Part shown: piece after piece, positions 5,007 to 34,073 of the stretch
How the letters are laid out: every line of letters starts with the position of its first letter
Position numbering within the stretch: the first letter of the stretch is position 1
Assembly: GCA_013239625.1 (NCBI GenBank)
Contig: MU053559.1
Location: forward strand, 1,240,001-1,304,000
Length of the DNA stretch: 64,000 bases
From: Lama guanicoe
Taxonomy: Eukaryota
Direction: 5' to 3'
Notes under the pieces: model-generated
Told to the model about the DNA's origin: nothing
The model's input: the letters and a program-made list of their open reading frames with translations, nothing else
Database searches by the model: none
Made by a program: the position numbers and the translations under genes

Positions 5007-6099
5007 GGGGTGGGGGGGCAAAGGAGGGCCTAGAAACCAATCTCTGTCAGGGTGAGGAGGGTGAGTCCCTGCTACTCATGAACAACCCCAGACAAGGTGG
5101 CCCAGGGACACTGGCATTGGCAAGATGACCTAGATGGGGCTGCTGGAGGGAATGGGGCCACCAAAAAGCTGAGGCCGGCCTTCTTCTGCTTCCTCCTGGG
5201 CTCTGGGCCAACAAGGAGGGGGAAAGACCTGGCCCAGGAACCATCTGGACTCACAGCAGGGCCTAAGATGGCCCTGGGCCCAAGGGAAGTGGAGCTAGAT
5301 AGGAGGTTGAGGATGAGGCTGGGGGTGGATTCGAGGAGAGAAGTGGGTCATCTGTCACCTTGAAATCAGGTGCTTACCCCAGTGGCTTCCAAACCCCGCT
5401 TCTGCCTGCCTGAACTCATCACCCCCAGGATGGGCAGAGGGGCCAGCCTAGCAGGAAGACCTCAGTAAAGAGGATGAAGTCTATCCAAAGAACCCAGGAT
5501 AACATTAACGAAAAAAATCCTGACCCAGGAGGCTGAACACTGAACATGAAGCTGAGGAAGGTGAAGTGTGGCCAGGCCCCAAAGACTGTCTTGTATCCGT
5601 ATGGCGCAGATATCCAGTCGCTTTGCCTGCTGGGGTAGGGAATGGGGGATCTGAGGCGGGGAGGAGGGTGGCTGTAAGTAGGGCTAGATGGAGGATGAGG
5701 AGGGAGCCAGAAGGAATCATGAGTCTATGACCGCTAAGTGGAAACCCCAAGGGTTTGGCATGTTCCAGAGTTCATTTTGGGGGGAATTTTAGGAAGATGG
5801 GGTACAAAATCTGTGTATCATACAACACCCCCAGCAGGGGGACCCTGTGAACAGAGACATTTGAACATCAATATGCAGTAAAACTTGTAAATATCATTTC
5901 CGTTTTCTGAGATTTTTAGACTTTCAGAATAGTGAAGGAGGGAGCAAGAAAACTGGATACACAACCCCTCTCAAAAAAGAGCACATGTCCTTCTTGACAC
6001 CCCCCACCCAGAGGACACACCCATCCTCAGAATACCCTCACATCCAAGTATACTCACCACCTCACATCACACCGACCACTGTGGACACAGTCATCACAC

Positions 6100-8010
6100 T
6101 CTACTAACTCCCATAGGGACACACCATCCTCATCCTGTCCAGAACCATCCCATAAGCACACACTGGCCTCTCACTGTGTCCTGCTTCCTTCAGTACACAC
6201 TGGACCCTCAAGAAGGCTTCTTTGCATCTTAACTGCCATCAGCACTGCAATTTCCCTATTTATCTCTAACCTCCATCAGCATACAAAGCCCCAGCAAAGC
6301 ACTGAACTCTGTTAGCACACAATTGGGCCCCTCTAAATTAACTCTTACCACCATACTCTTGGGCCCCTCGCAGGCCCAGGTGCTTGTTAGCTTCTCCACA
6401 GCACTCACTGTTCCCCCAACATGATTCCGACCCCTATTAACATGCACTTGGGACCCGCTACAGCTAACCCACATTAGCACTCACTGGACCTTCACACTGC
6501 CCTGAATCCCATTAACACAAAGTGCACCCTGCAGATTCCGATTCCTGACCTGTTTTGCCCACACTCGGACCCCTCCACAGCTAGGATCATCATTAACATG
6601 TATTCTGGTCCTCCCACTACCCTGTCCCCCTACCTCTCATCAGCACAAGCTGGACCTTCACTTCACCGTGACCCCTATTAGCACTCACTGGGCCTCACAC
6701 AGTGTCACCCCATTAGCACAGCCTGAACCTGGACTCGGCTCTATTCTCCAGGGACGCACAAACACACTGTTCTATAATGGCCTGACCCTCATTAGCACAC
6801 ACAGATCCTCATTCAGCCCGGAACCCCATTAGCCCACTCCAGCCCTCCATGGCTCTAATCCACTTTAGCACACCTAGATCTTCCCATAGTCCTGTCCTTT
6901 ATTTCTCTTCGCTTCAACTCCTCCACAGCTCTAAGCCCTGTTGGCTGACACTTGGATCCTTTCATAGCCCTGAGCGTCCCTATGGCACACTAGATCCCCT
7001 CCACAGTTCTACCCCCCATTAGCATTCCTGGGGACCTCAACACACCACAGGCCCCCACGGACACATGGGCACACACAGCCTTCATAATGTTCTGACGCTC
7101 ATTAGCATATTCCAGACCTCATACTGCTCTGATTCTCGCCCCCTCCCACCCCGGCACACATTTAAGCGCCTCCATGACTCTAAACCCACCTTAGCAGTCA
7201 TTAGAACTTCATCTGTTACCCTGCCCCTTCTTAGGGCATCCTAGAGTCTCTCAGATCCCCTGACCTCATGGACACACATACACACTGATCTCATACCATC
7301 TTGATCCTTAATACACTGACCCTTTTACAGTGCTAAGATACTTCCCTTGCCACCAACCACCACCCCACACACATAGCCACAATTCTGATACCCATTAGCA
7401 GAGGCTCAGGTCTTCCACCACTCTGCCCCCATTAGCTTACACTGGGCCTTAGACTACCCAGACCTTCATTACCATATGCACATATCCTCTATGGCTATGA
7501 CCGCCCCCATTAGCACCCTCTCAATACGGGAGTTTTTCCACTACCCTGCCCTCCATGAGCACACCCTGGACCCTCACACCCTGCAGTCCCTCATGGACAA
7601 ATGCACAGTAGTAACACCATCCTAACCCTCATTACCACAGTCAGGGCCTCAGAGCCCAGATCCTATGAGCACACCTTCTGGTACCTCTACCATCTCATCC
7701 CCCAGTGACACACACAGGGCCTCTCTACAGCTATAACCCCATTTGCATACCTCGTACTCCTCTGACGTCCTCTCCCCTGTTATACATCTCCTCGGGTCCC
7801 TCCATCGCCTTGCACCGCCCCTCTGTTAGCACACACTGGGCCTCAAAACCTCACACAGCGGTAAGACTTTTATTATTATCACATGATCGGACCCCTCCAC
7901 AGCTCAGGTCCCCATTAGCAAACCTCTAGTCTTTCACCACACGGCCACCTATCTCCACACCCTCTGGTCCTTCGATCACCCCGCTCCCCATTAGCACCCA
8001 CACTACTTCC
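6100..8010. repeat. Decayed ~37-39 bp minisatellite in CDK16 intron 1 (core CCCATTAGCACAC)
   Basis: Core variants at 6436, 6473, 6511, 6592, 6639, 6677, 6712, 6791, 6828, 6864, 7018, 7101, 7394, 7431, 7468, 7509, 7741, 7825, 7914 and 7990. Confidence 0.8.
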
Positions 8011-9520
8011 CATCTCCAGCTTCCAGACCGGGCCCAGGGCGGGGCCAAGGTCAGGGAGGCCCCGAATGACCCCCCGTCCCGGTGCATTCTGGGAAACTCG
8101 CCGCGGGAGGGGGCACATGCCAGCGGTGCAGCCCAGACCCCTGGGCACCGCCCGGGGTCTGGGTTGGTTCTGCAGAAGGAANNNNNNNNNNNNNNNNNNN
8201 NNNNNNNNNNNNNNNNNNNNNNNNNNNNNNNNNNNNNNNNNNNNNNNNNNNNNNNNNNNNNNNNNNNNNNNNNNNNNNNNNNNNNNNNNNNNNNNNNNNN
8301 NNNNNNNNNNNNNNNNNNNNNNNNNNNNNNNNNNNNNNNNNNNNNNNNNNNNNNNNNNNNNNNNNNNNNNNNNNNNNNNNNNNNNNNNNNNNNNNNNNNN
8401 NNNNNNNNNNNNNNNNNNNNNNNNNNNNNNNNNNNNNNNNNNNNNNNNNNNNNNNNNNNNNNNNNNNNNNNNNNNNNNNNNNNNNNNNNCCGGCTCGAAT
8501 CCGAGAGCTCACGGCGGCTCGCGGTTCAGAGCCGACTGCTCGCAGAGACGCGGCGGATCCCAGGGCCGAGCAGCCAATGGCCCAACCACTGCGCGCGCCG
8601 CGCTCCGCGCATGCGCACGCACGCGCTGGAAAGGGTGAAGTGGGAAGGAGGGGACTCACCTCGGACTGCATGTACCAAAAAACCCGTCCACAGCGGGAGG
8701 GGGCGCGGCCATTGCGCGCCCACTGGGGAATGTGGCGCTGGCCCTGGAACGGCGCCAGGGGGAAGTGTAGAGGTTGCTTAGTACTCAGTTCCGATCTTGC
8801 TAGAAGTTTGCTAGCGCCGAAGCGGGCAGCAGCCAGTGACAGCGTGTCAGTCACCAGTCGCTCCCCCTACTCAGTCTCACTTGGTACATCCCCATGATGG
8901 CAAACGGGACTTTTGCGAGGAAAAAGACAGTGAGGCACTCAGTCCTAGTTTCTTGAGGAGCCTCAAGAGGCAGCGGTTATAAAGGTTCGCGACAAGATGA
9001 TTTTTCTAGGAGAGGTGGCCTGGAGAATCATTGGCTTTTACCACCTTAGATAGGACAGAATCTAGCCCCTCCCAGCTGCTCCCCACTCCTCCCCGATCGC
9101 GAGCTCATTGCCACTGTGAACGTGTGCGGCCCCGCCCTTTGAGGTTGTTGCCCAGCCAATCGGATTTGCTCTCTGGGGTGAGGCAGAGCAAGAATGAAAG
9201 GCGAGGCCTGGCTGAAGAGGCGTGATTTCACTGTCCCGACCACGCCTCTGCCAGCTTTTCATTGGTTTTTACAGTAGAGGAGGCGGGTCCTCCTTTTTGT
9301 TCTGCACGCCTTTCTTACCATAGATCAAGTATCCCACAAGATGATTGGTCAAAAGACCATTCAATCGCGTTTCATCCCGCCTTTAACCCCTCCCATCTCC
9401 GTCAGAGAGGCTCACGGGGTGGAGCCTAGGCTGATGGGAAAGAACAGACCTTTAGAGGGGCGAGTGCATTACTGCGCATGCTTGGGACTTGGGGCTGGAA
9501 GGAGGCCTCTTTTCTGTCTC
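8000..9520 (-). promoter_or_regulatory. CDK16 CpG-island promoter
   Basis: CpG-dense region. NRF1 palindrome GCGCATGCGC at 8607-8616, CCAAT/ATTGG boxes (8574, ~9156, ~9261, ~9344), and GC boxes (~8037, ~9130). The main non-coding exon 1 probably lies in gap 8182-8489. Confidence 0.85.
8660..8671 (-). CDS. CDK16: Coding end of an alternative CDK16 first exon (MQSE), giving the [13 protein letters not shown]-terminus
   Basis: ATG CAG TCC GAG|GTGAGT has a consensus donor. It is in frame with the 6 nt (GTCGCC) preceding the main ATG in exon 2. It matches the MQSEIAMDRMKK human isoform as I recall it. Confidence 0.8.
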
Positions 9521-12287: not shown

Positions 12288-12462
12288 AGGATTCAGGTTC
12301 CAAACAAGGTAGAAAGCAGCGGCAAGAGGGATTCAGGGAGGGAATGACGAGGGAACACCACGCTTGGCTAGCTGGGCCACTGCCAGAGGCCAAACGGGAG
12401 CCCTGGGCTGGAGAGGGGTCTGGAGAAGGGGCCTGGGGTCCGTCTACAGGAGAGGAGAGGGC

Positions 12463-25640
<13,178 letters not shown>

Positions 25641-28600: not shown

Positions 28601-29639
28601 ACTGAGCCTGCTGTGGGAAGGGACAAATGACAGTGATGTTGGGGTCCTACAAAGCTAAAAACAGAAGCTGAAAGCCTGACTGGAGATGCTGGGATCTTGA
28701 AAGGTTCTGAGGATAGATTTTAGGCTCAATGTGAGGTTTAAGGGATCTGTGAGAGAAGGTGGAACCCTGGTTGGCTTTTGAAGGCAGAGATTGATTAAAG
28801 GGGGGGATATGAAAGGCAAGTCTCTGATGGAGGGGGCCAGAAGCCAACGGGGTCTGCAATGGCAGAGGCTGGCAGGGAGATATCTGATGGAGGATTATAT
28901 GTTCAAACAGTTCGTCCCTGGTGTTTGGTCCCCTGGGAGGCTCTGTCCGAAATACCAGGGGTTAGGGGGTCTGACGGGGGGATGCTGAGCCCTGCAAGGG
29001 GTTGTCTCTGAAGAGAATACTGGGACCACAGAAAAGGAGGCATTCCCTTAAAGTAGATGAAGTCCCTGAGAGCAGATTCTAGGAATTAAAGGAGTCTCTA
29101 AAGGTGAATGCGGAGGGGTGTCTCTGAATTAAAACGCTGGCCTGGAGGGGTGTAGGATGGAAGATGCTAGGGCCGGGGTGGGGTTGGGAGACCCCTGAGA
29201 TGTGAAGGAGGGGTCTCCGACATGGAGGCCAGGCCCAAATGGCCTTTCACAGGGTCTAGACCTCTTGGAAGCTCTGAGAGTAGATCGAGTGTGTGTCGCG
29301 GGGGAGGGTGATTCTGAAGGAAGATGCTAGAGAAGACTCTATTTCAGATGAATGAAATCAAATGGACCCTCCCTAAGGTCTGATCCCTCCTGGAAGCTGC
29401 GAGGGCAAGTACTGAGACTAGGTTGTCTGAAGAGATCCTGGGGAAGATCTTTAACGACATGCGCTGGTAGGAGGCTTTGCACAGGAATGCCGACCCGGTA
29501 AGTCTCTACTGCTGACTGAGGGGAGTTCCGACCCGCGATGCAAGGTTCGAGACCGGGCCAGGTCCCTGACTAGGAATGCTAGCCTGAAGCTCTAAAAACA
29601 GATCCTGGGGGTCTGACCCCAAGGTCAGATTCCGGAGCT

Positions 29640-30120
29640 CGAAGTGATTGGGCTGGTCCCGGATGGGAACTGGCCCCGCCCCAAGAACTGCCCCCTGCTT
29701 CTTCCCTCCGAACCCTAGCGCACCAGTCATCACTGCCCGCCCCGACATCAGCCTGGCCCAGCGCCGGCCCAGATCCGGCACTACTTCCCGAAACCTCTGC
29801 CCCGGCCAAGGCGCCGAGAAAGGACGTTTGTTACCAATGCCGGTTCCCCGGGTCGCGCCGCCGCCAACTCCTCTAGGAGCCGAAGCCAAGCCCGGCCGCC
29901 GCCACCCTCCTCCTTCTCCTCCTCCTCCTCCCCGCCGCCTGGGCCGCCTAGAATCACCGCCGCTGTCTTCTCCTTTCCCGGCTGTAGTGATCCTGCTCGT
30001 CCCTGCCACCTCCTTCACCTCCGCCGCCGACACAAGATGGCGACTACGGAGCCTGGGGCCGGAACAAAACCTTGGGCCCCACCCCCAGAAACCCGGATGC
30101 AGGCTGGCCGCGCCCATTCA
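29640..30120 (-). promoter_or_regulatory. UBA1 proximal CpG-island promoter with YY1 and ETS motifs
   Basis: CAAGATGGCG (YY1, GCCATCTTG on the - strand) at 30033-30042, CCGGAA at ~30059, CCGGATG at ~30093, and high CpG density. Confidence 0.8.
29835..30050 (-). other. UBA1: UBA1 proximal non-coding first exon (5'UTR) in a CpG island
   Basis: Ends ...GAACCGGCATTG|GTAACA and contains no ATG. The 5' end is approximate. Confidence 0.8.
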
Positions 30121-30803
30121 TGAATCATATATGAGAGTCCCACACTGTCTGTGATTCATTCGAAGAGGAATAGCTCCATCTGGTGGCTGGCTACTGTGGC
30201 CGTGACTAGGAAAACAGGTAAAACTACATAGAGGCCATGCCCATGGGAATATGAATAAAGAATACTTTGTTACAGCCAGGCTACTATGGGAACCAAGAAA
30301 GGACTGCAAGGCCACACTTCCTAATCGTGAATTATGCATGAGGCCGGGTGGCTGGTCGACTAACACACTGCATCCAGAAAGCCAATGTTGAAACATGGAA
30401 GCCACGCCCCATGCTCATGAATAATGAATGATTTTGCTGCAGCCAGGAAGTCAAGCGGACCAAGGCTACATCTTCTCATGAATAATGCATGAGGCCCGGT
30501 GGGCAAGAACAAAAGAGACAGGTCTGCCTATGGCTGCATCTAATACCCTGTAAGCAGGGAAATAGGGCTAACACAGGTAAAACACACTACCCCCCCCTCG
30601 CTCATGAATAATGAATGGTGATGCTGCAGTGGCTAAACCTGGAGACTCAGCGAGGTCAAGAAAGGTCCCATTCAGTTACTCGTGAATTATGCATGAGGCT
30701 GGATGGACAGAAATACTCAAGACAGCACTGCCCAGCAAGTAGGGATTATTGGTACTCCAGACAAGGCAACATGGTCATGCCTTCCTGTTCATGCATAATG
30801 AAA
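30120..30803. promoter_or_regulatory. Cluster of 8 palindromic POU-dimer (MORE+1-like) motifs
   Basis: RTGMATWATGMAT-like words at 30120, 30251, 30327, 30417, 30478, 30604, 30682 and 30791. Confidence 0.7.
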
Positions 30804-31119
30804 GATGCTGCAGAGCCACAGGGGAAACCCAGGGGAAGTGTAAATGCCTCCTCCCCACCCTTGACTAACTGCACATGAACTAGGGCTGCCTTGGTCCCGC
30901 CAGATCCAGATTTACTACATGTCTCTGGCAGGTGCCTCAGTTTCTACAACTGTAAAATGGAGATAGTAATAGAACCCACCTACCTTATAAAGGCAAAATA
31001 TGTTACTATGAAAACCAGAGAAGATGAACTATGGAATGAGCTCAGAGCAGTGTTGGCACAGGGAACTGTTAAGGTTTTTGAGCATTATATAGTAATATAA
31101 AGGTAATATGTAAATACAT

Positions 31120-31200
31120 TTTATATTAATATAAAACATTATATTAATATAAAACGTTATATATATAATATAAAACATTATATTTATATTAATATAAAAC
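31120..31200. repeat. AT-rich ~20-bp minisatellite
   Basis: TTATATTAATATAAAACA-like unit, about 4 copies. Confidence 0.8.
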
Positions 31201-31589
31201 TCAGCTACTAGAGGAACCTCCATTTTGGGGCATTATTTTAAAAAAATAATGCTTTGAAACACCATTCCAGAATTACACTGGAAAACAGAATGCTAAGGTA
31301 AGGTCACCCATATCCATTAAATAGGTAGGATAGACTACCAGGTCATCAGAGATACAATTGTATCTCAAAGCCCCAGGCACACAATAAGCACCCAATACAT
31401 TTCTGTTGAATAATAATAATAAATCACATCACTGATCACCCGCTATGCAGGGTTTCCTCTCCATGCATTGTGCCACTGGTCTCAGGAACGCAGAGCAGGA
31501 AATCAGTTTCCTCTCGTCCTTCAGGTCTCAGCTCAAAGGTGACCTTCTTAGAAGGTTTTTAACCCCTCACAAAAATCATTTCCACCCAC

Positions 31590-32000
31590 TGATGACTAGC
31601 TGTGTGACTTGGGGCCAGACACTTCACTTCTCGGTGCCACTTTCCCAACCCCTAAAATGAAAACAATGGTAACTTACCTTGTGATGGAGTTTAAATGAAG
31701 AAATATGCTGAAATGGCTCAGAACAGTGCCTGGCACATAGTGCTATAGGACTAACAGTGGTAGTACCATTAAGTAGGGTGTGTGAGGGCAGAACAATGTA
31801 GTATTTGATTAAAACTTCAGACCCTGAACTAGACTGACTGGGTCTGAATCCTAGGTCAGCCAGTCACTGACTGTGAGTAACCTTAGGCAAATTACCTACC
31901 CTCCTGGTGTCCCAGTTTCCTCATCTATAAAATGGGATGATAATAACCTACCTCCTGGGATTGTTGTGGGGATTAAATGGGCTAATAAAGTGCTAAATGA
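31590..32000 (+). mobile_element. Two adjacent MIR SINEs
   Basis: CTAGCTGTGTGACTTGGGGC...; CAGTTTCCTCATCTATAAAATGGGATGATAATA core. Confidence 0.7.
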
Positions 32001-32148
32001 GTGTAAACTAATCTGATCATCATTATGCTCATACCCATTTTTTTCAGCCTCACAGAAAGATTTGCCAAAGATCACACAGCTGGCAAGGATCGATGCGATT
32101 TGAAGTTAGACCCTTTGTCGATAATCTGGGATTACTGAGCCATAAAGA

Positions 32149-32490
32149 ATGAACAATGAGCGAGGCCTCATCCCTTCGCTACATATAAGACTTAAATCCT
32201 GAAACCTATCAGGGGAAGCTAACAGCAGATCCTGCAGGTGAAGCTGTAAAAGCTACGCCCCTCATGAATTACGCACAATACTCCTAGAAAAGCCATGGAA
32301 ACATCGGGGCGGACTACTCACCTTGATGCTTAATCAGTGAGATCTAATTTGCTCGGCAGACTGACGCCCCTTCAGCACGCTGATCCGCCCCCCTCGTGAA
32401 TAATTCACAACCTGATACTTTCAACGGACCAGGTGCAAAAGAGGCAAAAATGGGCTTCCTCAACAGCACACCTCCTCATGAATAACGAAT
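32149..32490. promoter_or_regulatory. Second cluster of MORE+1-like motifs
   Basis: ATGAATTACGCAC at 32264, GTGAATAATTCAC at 32396 and ATGAATAACGAAT at 32478. Weaker copies at 32149 and 32326. Confidence 0.6.
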
Positions 32491-33150
32491 AAAGCCACGG
32501 ACAACGAAGGCCCGGTGGCACCCAGTCCCTTCGGGGAAAAGCCCAGCACAGTAGGCTCCGGTGTCCCTTCCCCAGCCTGGGCCGGGGGCTCCTCTTCCTA
32601 AAACTGTGGGGGCCCCACCGTGTCCAGTCCCTCTGCCTCTAATACCCAAGTGTGGTGAGACATCATAATAGAGCCAGAGGTCACAAAGGCCATAGGTACC
32701 TCCCCATGCCACGTCGGTCTCAAATGCTCCTCTTGTCACCGGGACCTTTCCTGAAACAAGCGCTCCCAAAATTCCGCCTTGAGTTCAGAAACCTCAAACT
32801 TTGCCTCTACCCTTGGGAAGTACACCAAACCCTGCCCCATGGACAGAGTACTCATACACGGACCCTAGGAGTCTTCCCAAACATCCCCCTGAACCCTGTC
32901 TCCAAGAGGTATAAACCCTGCCTCGGAGGGGTATCTAAACCCTGCCTCCGAGGGACGCTCTTCAAACAGACCCCCAAATCCCACTCCGGAGTCCCTAAAC
33001 GCCACTTACTAAGGGTCCCCTCAAAAACTGCCATCTCTAAGTGCCACCCGGGGCCCGGAGCCTCCAAATATGCCCACTCGGGGATCCCCGAAATTGAACT
33101 CCCTCTCTCAAATGCTGTCCAGAGGTTGGGGGTACCGCGCTCCAGCTCAC

Positions 33151-33330
33151 CCCCTGCGCCGGGCGGAAGCCTCGCCTTCCTGCTGGAGATGAGCCGAAGC
33201 CACGGGGCAGCGGAAGAGCAAACCACCTTCGTCGTGCAAGAAGAGCCAGAGTTTGCGCGGAGCTCGGAAGCGCGGGGCCTTGGAGGGCCCCTGGTTTGGG
33301 ACGCACCATAGGTGCATAGCTAGAGGGGCG
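33151..33330 (-). other. UBA1: UBA1 distal alternative non-coding first exon in a second CpG island (~33000-33570)
   Basis: Ends ...CTTCCGCCCGGCGCAGGGG|GTGAGC. CpG-rich and about 3 kb upstream of the proximal exon, matching the two-promoter organisation of human UBA1 as I recall it. Confidence 0.7.
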
Positions 33331-34073
33331 CCCGCCCCTTCTCCCGCGCCGCCGGCGCCAGTGTCAGACCCACACACCCCTGCGCGTTGTGGTACTTCCC
33401 TAGCGCGCGAGGCATGCTGGGGGTGGTAGTCCGGGTCAGCCAGTGCCTGGTGCACGTGGTGGGCATCAGCGCCCAGGGTAAGGGGAAATGAAAACCTGGG
33501 CTGTGGAACTCTAGGAGCCGTGCTGGGAGCTGAGTGGGCGGCGAGGGCAGTAGGAAAAGGGAGCGGAACATGAGGGTACCTCCAGATGGAAAGGCACACC
33601 CATCCTACAGATGGGAAAGCTGAGGTTCAGGTGGCCAAAGGAGTTCATTCATTTGACATTTATGGAGTTCAAGCTGTGGGCCAGGTGCTAGGGATTCTTC
33701 CTTGTCCTCGCGGAGCTGACACGCTAGCCAGACAGACAGACCATAAATGTAACAAATAAGTTAAAATTGTTAGATACATGTGAATATAATATAAATTATG
33801 TATAAAAATGTACATATAAATACAACATGATAGCTAGTGTCAGTATGTTAATAATTTCCGTCTGTATATCATGTTTTAAATACAGTGTATGTAGTCTACT
33901 CATACGTGAATATACAATTAAATATACATTGTATATATGTGATAACTGCTAAATGCTATGGAGAAAAATAGAACAAGGTAAGGGGAAATCTGTGGGTTCA
34001 GGTTGCATTTTTAGATAATGTGGTCAAGGAAGGCTTCACTTAGAAGGTGATGTCCAAGCAAAGATGTTTAACA

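What the first reader, a model, noticed from the sequence alone, without database searches (positions are those of the whole stretch)
30120..30803. Phased homotypic array of palindromic POU-dimer (MORE+1) sites directly upstream of the UBA1 TSS
Seen: eight copies of CTCATGAATAATGCATGAG-like words in two alternating subtypes. Type A (ATGAATAATGAAT.. followed by TGCTGCAG or a variant) is at 30251, 30417, 30604 and 30791, with spacings 166, 187 and 187 bp. Type B (RTGAATWATGCATGAGGC) is at 30327, 30478 and 30682, plus a variant at 30120. The spacers have diverged while the motifs are retained. Established: ATG(C/A)AT-W-AT(G/T)CAT is the MORE+1/IR1 configuration bound by POU dimers (Oct-1, Oct-6, Brn-2). 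Inference: an old ~170-190 bp tandem amplification kept for its POU sites at roughly nucleosome-repeat spacing, acting as a nucleosome-phasing or anti-silencing module for UBA1.
Basis: partly seen in the sequence, partly recalled or inferred. Interest (0 to 1): 0.8.

Follow-up and report, generated by a model that had tools for sequence, protein, structure and literature searches.

The report
POU-like site array upstream of UBA1
Just upstream of the second (proximal) start site of the ubiquitin-activating enzyme gene UBA1 lies an old, decayed tandem repeat. It has kept eleven copies of one 18-19-base word that looks like a docking site for POU/Oct transcription factors, so it is probably a real regulatory module, but nobody has yet shown what binds it.

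Summary
All eight words sit at the stated coordinates. Three more lie at 32261-32493, giving eleven copies of CTCRTGAATWATGMATGA, all in one orientation. The 10-base core occurs 9 times on the + strand in 64 kb (0.45 expected on both strands together), and only here.

UBA1 is on the minus strand. Cluster 1 (30117-30806) starts about 80 bp upstream of the proximal alternative first exon (Ex1'). It therefore lies inside intron 1 of transcripts from the distal start site.

The four ~150-207-bp units are homologous. Word columns are far better kept than spacers: 24/38 versus 14/93 invariant columns (p 1e-7), and identity 0.80 versus 0.45.

Only one copy (30478) is an exact MORE+1 POU-dimer site. 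Four are one mismatch away and the rest two or three. The first 11 bases are the conserved part. CpG decay may have created some of the POU likeness.

Spurious ORFs from other mammals show the promoter-nearest copy retained in five sequence clusters. Where spacers could be compared they were conserved about as well.

A CTCF-like site lies inside the array. Nucleosome phasing and anti-silencing were not tested.

The parts
30117..30135 (+). Copy B0, TTCATGAATCATATATGAG. It is the nearest copy to the proximal first exon (about 80-100 bp upstream).
   Evidence: The core ATGAATCAT is retained in ORF translations from five other sequence clusters (MIHEW / IIHEW / MIHD / IIHD).
30248..30266 (+). Copy A1, TATGAATAAAGAATACTTT (degenerate type A; contains AATAAA).
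   Evidence: 2 mismatches to MORE+1. P0005 keeps YSLF over it.
30324..30342 (+). Copy B1, ATCGTGAATTATGCATGAG, followed by GCCGGGTGG.
   Evidence: 1 mismatch. P0005 keeps GLMHNS over it.
30414..30432 (+). Copy A2, CTCATGAATAATGAATGAT, preceded by GCCACGCCCC and followed by TTTGCTGCAG.
   Evidence: 1 mismatch.
30475..30493 (+). Copy B2, CTCATGAATAATGCATGAG. It is the only exact MORE+1 (A4C4 type) site and a 19-nt near-palindrome.
   Evidence: 0 mismatches.
30601..30619 (+). Copy A3, CTCATGAATAATGAATGGT, followed by GATGCTGCAG.
30679..30697 (+). Copy B3, CTCGTGAATTATGCATGAG, followed by GCTGGATGG.
30788..30806 (+). Copy A4, TTCATGCATAATGAAAGAT, followed by GCTGCAG.
   Evidence: 2 mismatches.
32261..32279 (+). 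Copy C1, CTCATGAATTACGCACAAT (CpG-bearing), preceded by GCTACGCCC.
32393..32411 (+). Copy C2, CTCGTGAATAATTCACAAC, preceded by CCGCCCCC.
32475..32493 (+). Copy C3, CTCATGAATAACGAATAAA (CpG-bearing).
30173..30186 (-). CTCF-consensus-like site CCACCAGATGGAGC, inside the first unit of the array, about 140 bp upstream of Ex1'.
   Evidence: 1 mismatch to CCASYAGRKGGCRS, one of only two such sites in 64 kb, although the total count is at chance level. The ATRW codons over it are kept in P0005. Human papers place an occupied CTCF element just upstream of the escaping start site (10.1101/2024.06.14.599122).
29861..30035 (-). Proximal alternative non-coding first exon of UBA1 (Ex1' / TSS1') within a CpG island.
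   Evidence: Human Ex1' primers from PMC2794193 match with 1 and 6 mismatches. GC is 0.63-0.65.
33177..33269 (-). Distal first exon of UBA1 (Ex1 / TSS1) within a second CpG island.
   Evidence: Human TSS1 primers match with 0 and 4 mismatches. GC is 0.61-0.65.
30931..30981 (.). Interspersed-repeat fragment (MIR-like by my recollection), in the DNA that separates cluster 1 from cluster 2.
   Evidence: 76% identical to 31906-31953. The 31874-31936 part of that neighbouring segment has a further, reverse-oriented copy at 25513-25573.

Best explanation
This is an old tandem duplication. Its basic unit is a C-rich box plus an 18-19-nt word. That unit was later amplified as an A+B pair of about 190 bp. 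The result is a same-orientation cluster of eleven sites for one sequence-specific DNA-binding factor in UBA1 intron 1 and the proximal promoter. The factor is most likely a POU-domain protein. The ubiquitous Oct-1/POU2F1 is the natural candidate for a housekeeping gene, and class III or IV POU factors in neural tissue. It would bind as a MORE+1-type dimer on the B copies, and as a monomer or weaker dimer on the CTCRTGAATWA half of the others. The cluster would then act as an upstream activating module for the proximal start site (TSS1'). Shown here: the words, their excess over chance, their position relative to the two first exons, unit homology, and slower decay of words than spacers. Inferred: that the slower decay reflects purifying selection for protein binding, that the protein is a POU factor, and that the effect is activation of TSS1'.
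For: The core occurs 9 times on the + strand against 0.45 expected on both strands, only at 30325-32476. The logo of the eleven copies carries information over 18 positions and almost none in the flanks. In the four-unit alignment, 24 of 38 word columns are invariant against 14 of 93 fully occupied spacer columns, Fisher p 1e-7. Pairwise identity is 0.80 against 0.45, JC distance 0.24 against 0.98. Like-type spacers still align in register, so the copies descend from duplication rather than convergence. B2 equals the published MORE+1 consensus ATG[C/A]AT[A/T]AT[T/G]CAT, and four further copies are one mismatch away (PMC10812921). MORE+1-A4C4 sites are bound by Oct6/Brn1/Brn2 in vivo (PMC4576985). 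The copy nearest the promoter, B0, is retained in ORF translations from five other clusters, and B1 and A1 are retained in the one cluster that reaches them. The first copy is about 80 bp upstream of Ex1'.
Against: There are no binding data of any kind, and no paper in the library links UBA1 to POU factors. Only one copy is an exact MORE+1. Type A and cluster 2 are not palindromic. The first 11 bases are kept at 0.81 and the last 8 at only 0.56. All copies share one orientation, which fits an asymmetric site better than a symmetric dimer. The G/A, CG/TG and TG/CA alternatives among copies fit decay of an ancestral CpG-bearing word (CTCGTGAATAACGMACGAG). In that case part of the POU likeness would be a by-product. 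The one cross-species comparison that covers spacers cannot separate words from spacers: by my hand count on the alignment, 9/12 against 20/28 codons are identical. TE origin was not tested.
Confidence: 0.5

Rival explanations
1. The same selected array of sites, but bound by a different factor. A long-footprint zinc-finger protein (for example a KRAB-ZNF) or another homeodomain complex would recognise the asymmetric CTCRTGAATWA word, or its ancestral CpG-bearing form. The MORE+1 likeness of the B copies would then be incidental.
For: The conserved information is asymmetric: the first 11 nt are at 0.81 and the last 8 at 0.56. All eleven copies share one orientation. About 18 informative positions is long for a POU dimer core of 13. 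The CpG-bearing variants in cluster 2 suggest a different ancestral word.
Against: No named alternative fits as well as the POU consensus: one exact match and four one-mismatch matches to a published 13-mer. The alternatives I weighed from memory (ZNF143 SBS, PAR-bZIP, C/EBP, PBX-HOX, TEAD, TAATGARAT) all fit worse, and TAATGARAT is not enriched in the array.
Confidence: 0.2
2. A relic with no present function: a decayed minisatellite, or the internal repeat of an ancient transposable element, whose AT-rich words merely decayed more slowly than the CpG-containing spacers.
For: TE origin could not be checked. The DNA around it is full of interspersed-repeat debris. CpG decay inflates spacer divergence. 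Where the cross-species ORF data cover spacers, they show no extra conservation of the words (my count on the alignment).
Against: A four-fold difference in distance between words and spacers within one array, 63% against 15% invariant columns, and the same word kept in two clusters whose spacers no longer resemble each other are hard to obtain neutrally. The array has no look-alike elsewhere in the 64 kb.
Confidence: 0.12
3. One reading: the array positions nucleosomes or blocks the spread of silencing, so that the proximal UBA1 start site can escape X inactivation.
For: In human the proximal start site escapes while the upstream ones do not, with a boundary of <1 kb just upstream of it (PMC2794193; 10.1101/2024.11.06.622310). 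That is the interval the array occupies here. A CTCF-like site sits inside the array.
Against: The human papers assign the boundary to a CTCF element. They also report near-equal factor occupancy on the active and inactive X at four binding elements within the escaping start site (10.1101/2024.06.14.599122; 10.1101/2024.11.06.622310). Escape of this start site differs between species (human, chimp and horse escape; mouse and cow do not; PMC7890635), and the species of this window is not known to me. Spacing is irregular (131/76/90/61/126/78/109 bp between successive copies), so 'phasing' is no more than unit length. Nothing could be tested here.
Confidence: 0.1
4. The array acts at the RNA level. 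In one version the words lie in intron 1 of distal-start transcripts. In another, read on the + strand, they act as poly(A)-signal-like words (AATAAA at A1 and C3, AATAAT elsewhere) that cut short upstream-antisense transcripts from the proximal promoter.
For: The + strand is the antisense direction from TSS1'. Two copies carry exact AATAAA. Antisense UBA1 transcripts were seen upstream of the distal start site in human (PMC2794193).
Against: Conservation covers 18 positions, not a hexamer, and only 2 of 11 copies have AATAAA. No Rfam family matches 29000-34000. No RNA reads could be laid.
Confidence: 0.03

Closest known systems
MORE / MORE+1 POU-dimer elements (ATG[C/A]AT[A/T]0-2AT[T/G]CAT), including the MORE+1-A4C4 composite sites bound by Oct6, Brn1 and Brn2 (PMC4576985; PMC10812921)
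   Same: B2 is an exact MORE+1-A4C4 word. B1, B3, A2 and A3 are one mismatch away. The CTCATG flank also occurs in the classical MORE oligonucleotide quoted in PMC4576985 (CCTCATGCATATGCAT).
   Different: Known MOREs are single sites near neural or Oct target genes. Here eleven related words form a same-orientation array at a housekeeping gene, most copies are not palindromic, and binding is untested.
Homotypic clusters of transcription-factor sites made by tandem duplication (a general class of promoter and enhancer architecture)
   Same: Several copies of one word lie within about 0.7 kb next to a start site, descend from duplicated units, and are kept better than the spacers.
   Different: The second cluster lies 1.5 kb away, separated by interspersed-repeat debris. 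The factor is unknown.
The boundary between the X-inactivated upstream start sites and the escaping proximal start site of human UBA1 (PMC2794193; 10.1101/2024.06.14.599122; 10.1101/2024.11.06.622310)
   Same: The interval is the same, as judged by primer anchors. A CTCF-like site is present at 30173-30186.
   Different: Those papers describe CTCF, CpG methylation and histone marks, not a POU-like array. Whether human DNA carries the array was not examined here.
X-linked tandem repeats bound by CTCF/YY1 on the inactive X (DXZ4, FIRRE, ICCE)
   Same: It is a tandem array on the X carrying a repeated factor-binding word, next to a CTCF-like site.
   Different: Those are kilobase-scale units with many copies, and the CTCF/YY1 sites lie in every unit. 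Here the units are about 190 bp, there are 4+ of them, and only a single CTCF-like site. This is a resemblance from my own knowledge only.

Membership tests
MORE+1 POU-dimer site | Two inverted half-sites, ATG[C/A]AT and AT[T/G]CAT | tested here: inconclusive
   The feature is met exactly by 1 of 11 copies (30478). Four copies have one mismatch, five have two and B0 has three (plus my count for B0). In type A the second half is ATGAAT, a direct rather than inverted repeat.
MORE+1 POU-dimer site | A single A/T base between the half-sites | tested here: met
   The base is A or T in 10 of 11 copies and C in B0 (column 9). No MORE+0 or MORE+2 form occurs in the window.
MORE+1 POU-dimer site | Bound by POU-domain homodimers in vitro or in vivo | not testable with these tools
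   No ChIP, EMSA or footprint data were available. The literature searches found nothing for UBA1.
Selected (functional) binding-site cluster | Words conserved better than the intervening DNA among paralogous units | tested here: met
   24/38 against 14/93 invariant columns, p 1e-7. Identity is 0.80 against 0.45.
Selected (functional) binding-site cluster | Words conserved better than the intervening DNA between species | tested here: inconclusive
   Only ORF translations were available. B0 is kept in 5 clusters, and B1 and A1 in 1. Spacer codons in that cluster are kept equally well: 20/28 against 9/12 by my count on the alignment.
Tandem repeat | Head-to-tail units that are homologous over their whole length | tested here: met
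   Four units of 151-207 bp align. Like-type spacers score 0.60-0.72 against 0.43 for shuffles, while cross-type spacers score 0.54 against 0.51. The array is too decayed for Tandem Repeats Finder. For cluster 2, homology beyond the word is not demonstrable.
Transposable-element-derived repeat | Match to a repeat-family consensus, or further copies elsewhere in the genome | not testable with these tools
   No Dfam or RepeatMasker was available. There are no other copies in the 64-kb window, none in the scan's own index, and the metagenome scan gave only bare 20-mer matches.
CTCF boundary element | CTCF core motif CCASYAGRKGGCRS | tested here: inconclusive
   There is one 1-mismatch site at 30173-30186, but window-wide counts equal chance (27 against 29). 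Occupancy is not testable.

The most novel reading that the evidence does not exclude
The array, together with the CTCF-like site embedded in it, is the sequence determinant of the sub-kilobase boundary that lets the proximal UBA1 start site stay active on the inactive X. A dense row of POU-type sites would keep the promoter-proximal 0.7 kb occupied and block inward spread of silencing. Gain, loss or decay of copies would then explain why this start site escapes in human, chimp and horse but not in mouse or cow.
Probability: 0.08. Interest if true: 0.8.

Novelty: new member of a known kind. Interest (0 to 1): 0.4.

Why it matters
UBA1 is the main ubiquitin-activating enzyme. It is mutated in VEXAS syndrome and X-linked spinal muscular atrophy. 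Its proximal start site is a textbook case of promoter-specific escape from X inactivation, with a boundary of less than 1 kb that current papers explain only by CTCF. A selected array of eleven identical-type factor sites in exactly that interval has not been described in any paper I could search. If a POU factor binds it, this gives a concrete, mutable candidate for control of the proximal promoter. It also allows a direct comparative test, because escape of this start site differs between mammals. If nothing binds it, it is an ordinary decayed repeat.

Tried and rejected

(2) Orthologues by DNA pattern. The metagenome scan with TCRTGAATWATGCATGAGGC gave 14 loci that share only the 20-mer. 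None is an orthologue and none was taken for human.

(3) Orthologues by spurious ORFs. The CpG-island ORF 29509-30117(-) found P0001-P0008 and 16 further cluster members, P0009-P0024. The array ORFs 30615-30875(+) and 30121-30405(-) found nothing.

(6) Literature. The exact words are not in any relevant paper. No paper links UBA1 with POU or Oct factors.

(7) Rfam gave no match in 29000-34000.

(8) The scan's own index gave nothing by sequence or by POU words.

(9) The bacterial promoter scan is irrelevant to a mammalian locus and is disregarded.

(10) TAATGARAT is not enriched in the array.

(11) Other factors weighed from memory and set aside as poorer fits: ZNF143 SBS, PAR-bZIP/NFIL3, C/EBP, PBX-HOX, TEAD, IRF.

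(12) The human In1-5 primers did not anchor unambiguously and were not used.

Exons were located only by short peptide words from my own knowledge and by published primers.

Full report
**Observation**

The stretch 30100-30810 was read directly.
- Type A (ATGAAT-A-ATGAAT, followed by TGCTGCAG or a variant) starts at 30251, 30417, 30604 and 30791.
- Type B (RTGAATWATGCATGAGGC) starts at 30327, 30478 and 30682, with a variant at 30120.

The excess over chance is large.
- ATGAATWATGMAT with up to one mismatch gives 7 hits against 0.13 expected.
- The 10-base core TCRTGMATWA gives 9 hits on the + strand, against 0.45 expected on both strands together.
- All of those core hits lie between 30325 and 32476.

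A scan with the 19-mer consensus found three further copies at 32261, 32393 and 32475. The feature therefore has eleven copies in two clusters, all in the same orientation.

The logo over the eleven copies is CTCRTGAATWATGMATGA, and the flanks carry almost no information. One copy was one base out of register in that table, so the logo is slightly understated. Most A-type and cluster-2 copies are preceded by a C-rich box (GCCACGCCCC and variants).

**Gene context**

UBA1 lies on the minus strand. The Met1 exon is near 25410 and the stop near 12420. These were located with short peptide words from my own knowledge of UBA1.

The published human primers of Goto and Kimura (PMC2794193) anchor both first exons in the window.
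- The distal first exon is at 33177-33269 (0 and 4 mismatches).
- The proximal alternative first exon, Ex1', is at 29861-30035 (1 and 6 mismatches).
- Both sit in CpG islands.

Cluster 1 therefore starts about 80 bp upstream of Ex1' and runs to about 770 bp upstream. For transcripts from the distal start site it is intronic. Cluster 2 lies between the anchors of the human amplicon In1-2 (32152-32174) and Ex1.

The DNA between the clusters holds copies of an interspersed repeat. I take them for MIR fragments, from memory only.

**Origin**

Tandem Repeats Finder does not call the array. Four units of 151-207 bp nevertheless align.

With the words removed, like-type spacers still match in register. 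The identical fraction is 0.72 for A>B spacers and 0.60 for B>A spacers, against 0.43 for shuffles. Cross-type pairs give 0.54 against 0.51. This supports an old tandem duplication of an A+B unit.

For cluster 2, nothing beyond the word and its C-rich box is demonstrably homologous.

**Retention of the words**

In the four-unit alignment, 24 of 38 word columns are invariant. Only 14 of 93 fully occupied spacer columns are (Fisher p 1e-7). Pairwise identity is 0.80 in the words and 0.45 in the spacers, giving Jukes-Cantor distances of 0.24 and 0.98.

Alignment anchoring inflates this contrast somewhat. The alignment-free counts above point the same way.

I read this as purifying selection on the word, which is an inference. 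The spacer distance suggests an age of the order of the eutherian radiation or older. That estimate is rough and is also an inference.

**What the word is**

The MORE consensus is ATG[C/A]AT[A/T]0-2AT[T/G]CAT (PMC10812921). MORE+1 sites, including A4C4 composites, occur under Oct6/Brn1/Brn2 ChIP-seq peaks (PMC4576985).

Against that 13-mer the copies score as follows (B0 counted by hand):
- 30478 is exact.
- 30327, 30417, 30604 and 30682 have one mismatch.
- 30251, 30791, 32264, 32396 and 32478 have two.
- 30120 has three.

The window has 16 matches at up to 2 mismatches, against 2.4 expected.

Several points weaken the dimer reading.
- Type A is a direct repeat, not an inverted one.
- The first 11 bases are kept at 0.81 and the last 8 at only 0.56.
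- All copies share one orientation, which suggests that an asymmetric word is what is recognised.
- The alternatives among copies (CTCG/CTCA, ACG/ATG, and CATG/CACA at the 3' end) are the products expected from CpG decay.

On the last point, the ancestral word may have been CTCGTGAATAACGMACGAG. Part of the MORE likeness could then be a decay product. This is inference.

**Other species**

No mammalian genome collection was on hand. The metagenome scan gave only bare 20-mer matches.

A mechanical ORF over the Ex1' CpG island (29509-30117, minus strand) found eight ORF 'proteins' from Logan and ENA contigs. These are translations of the orthologous region in other animals. Cluster members added more.

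None reads as human. The published human Ex1' primer carries TGA where P0001-P0007 read R in ASAPRGVGG. P0008 reads HEWARP where the human primer would give HEWGCV.

What these translations show:
- Those that reach the array keep the core of B0 (MIHEW, IIHEW, MIHD, IIHD, which translate ATGATTCATGAA-type DNA). This holds in five clusters.
- P0005 reaches 30366. It keeps B1 (GLMHNS), A1 (YSLF) and the CTCF-like word (ATRW).
- In that same comparison, by my hand count on the alignment, spacer codons are as well kept as word codons (20/28 against 9/12).
- That species is therefore too close to the window's species to separate selection on the words from shared ancestry.

**Neighbouring elements and the X-inactivation question**

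A CTCF-consensus-like site, CCACCAGATGGAGC (one mismatch), lies at 30173-30186 on the gene's strand, inside the first unit. Window-wide counts of such matches are at chance level, so the motif alone is weak evidence.

The human literature describes the following.
- The proximal start site escapes X inactivation while the upstream ones do not (PMC2794193; PMC5114649).
- The boundary is less than 1 kb wide (10.1101/2024.11.06.622310).
- An occupied CTCF element bookends the escaping start site (10.1101/2024.06.14.599122).
- Factor occupancy at four binding elements within the escaping start site barely differs between the active and the inactive X (10.1101/2024.11.06.622310).
- Escape of this start site varies among mammals: human, chimp and horse escape, mouse and cow do not (PMC7890635).

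The array occupies the equivalent interval. Nothing here shows that it contributes to the boundary. The 'nucleosome-repeat phasing' claim rests only on unit length, and successive copies are 131, 76, 90, 61, 126, 78 and 109 bp apart.

**Limits**

- TE origin was not tested.
- No binding, chromatin or expression data were examined.
- The species is coded and unknown to me.

**Verdict**

This is a real, statistically robust and apparently undescribed homotypic array of POU-like words. It derives from an old tandem duplication and sits at the proximal UBA1 promoter.
- The POU-dimer label fits a minority of copies exactly.
- The factor and the function remain inferences.
- The anti-silencing and phasing idea is untested.

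Noticed in passing
window 32261-32493: A second cluster of three copies of the same word (CTCATGAATTACGCACAAT, CTCGTGAATAATTCACAAC, CTCATGAATAACGAATAAA). They keep CpGs where cluster 1 has TG/CA, and lie 0.7-0.9 kb downstream of the distal first exon. By primer anchors this corresponds to the interval between the human amplicon In1-2 and Ex1; In1-1, where Xi-specific hypomethylation and CTCF were reported, could not be anchored.
   Followed up: partly
window 30173-30186 (-): A CTCF-consensus-like site, CCACCAGATGGAGC, lies inside the first unit of the array. It is retained at codon level in P0005.
   Followed up: partly
window 30034-30042 (+): AAGATGGCG, the YY1 core as I recall it, sits at the 5' edge of the proximal first exon, on the strand opposite to the gene. 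Weaker AACATGG words recur in the spacers (30394, 30770).
   Followed up: no
window 30931-30981, 31906-31953, 25513-25573: Three fragments of one interspersed repeat family (MIR-like by memory). Two of them lie between the two clusters.
   Followed up: partly
window 31121-31189: An AT-rich 18-bp tandem repeat (TTATATTAATATAAAACA, 3.7 copies) just beyond the array.
   Followed up: no
window 32892-32949: A 22-bp tandem repeat (AACCCTGCCTCCAAGAGGTACTA, 2.5 copies) in intron 1, close to the distal first exon.
   Followed up: no
window 5800-8200 (CDK16 intron 1): Notes s1-860031 and s1-860038 propose a related POU-core minisatellite here. Tandem Repeats Finder finds nothing. The core TCRTGMATWA has no hit. 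TAATGARAT with <=1 mismatch has one hit, and ATGCAAAT has one hit at 7741. No shared word with the UBA1 array was seen.
   Followed up: partly
window 29509-30117 (-) and proteins P0001-P0024: The public protein collection holds gene-caller ORFs that are translations of this non-coding CpG island from several mammals. They are useful as a back door to orthologous promoter sequence, but they are not proteins.
   Followed up: yes
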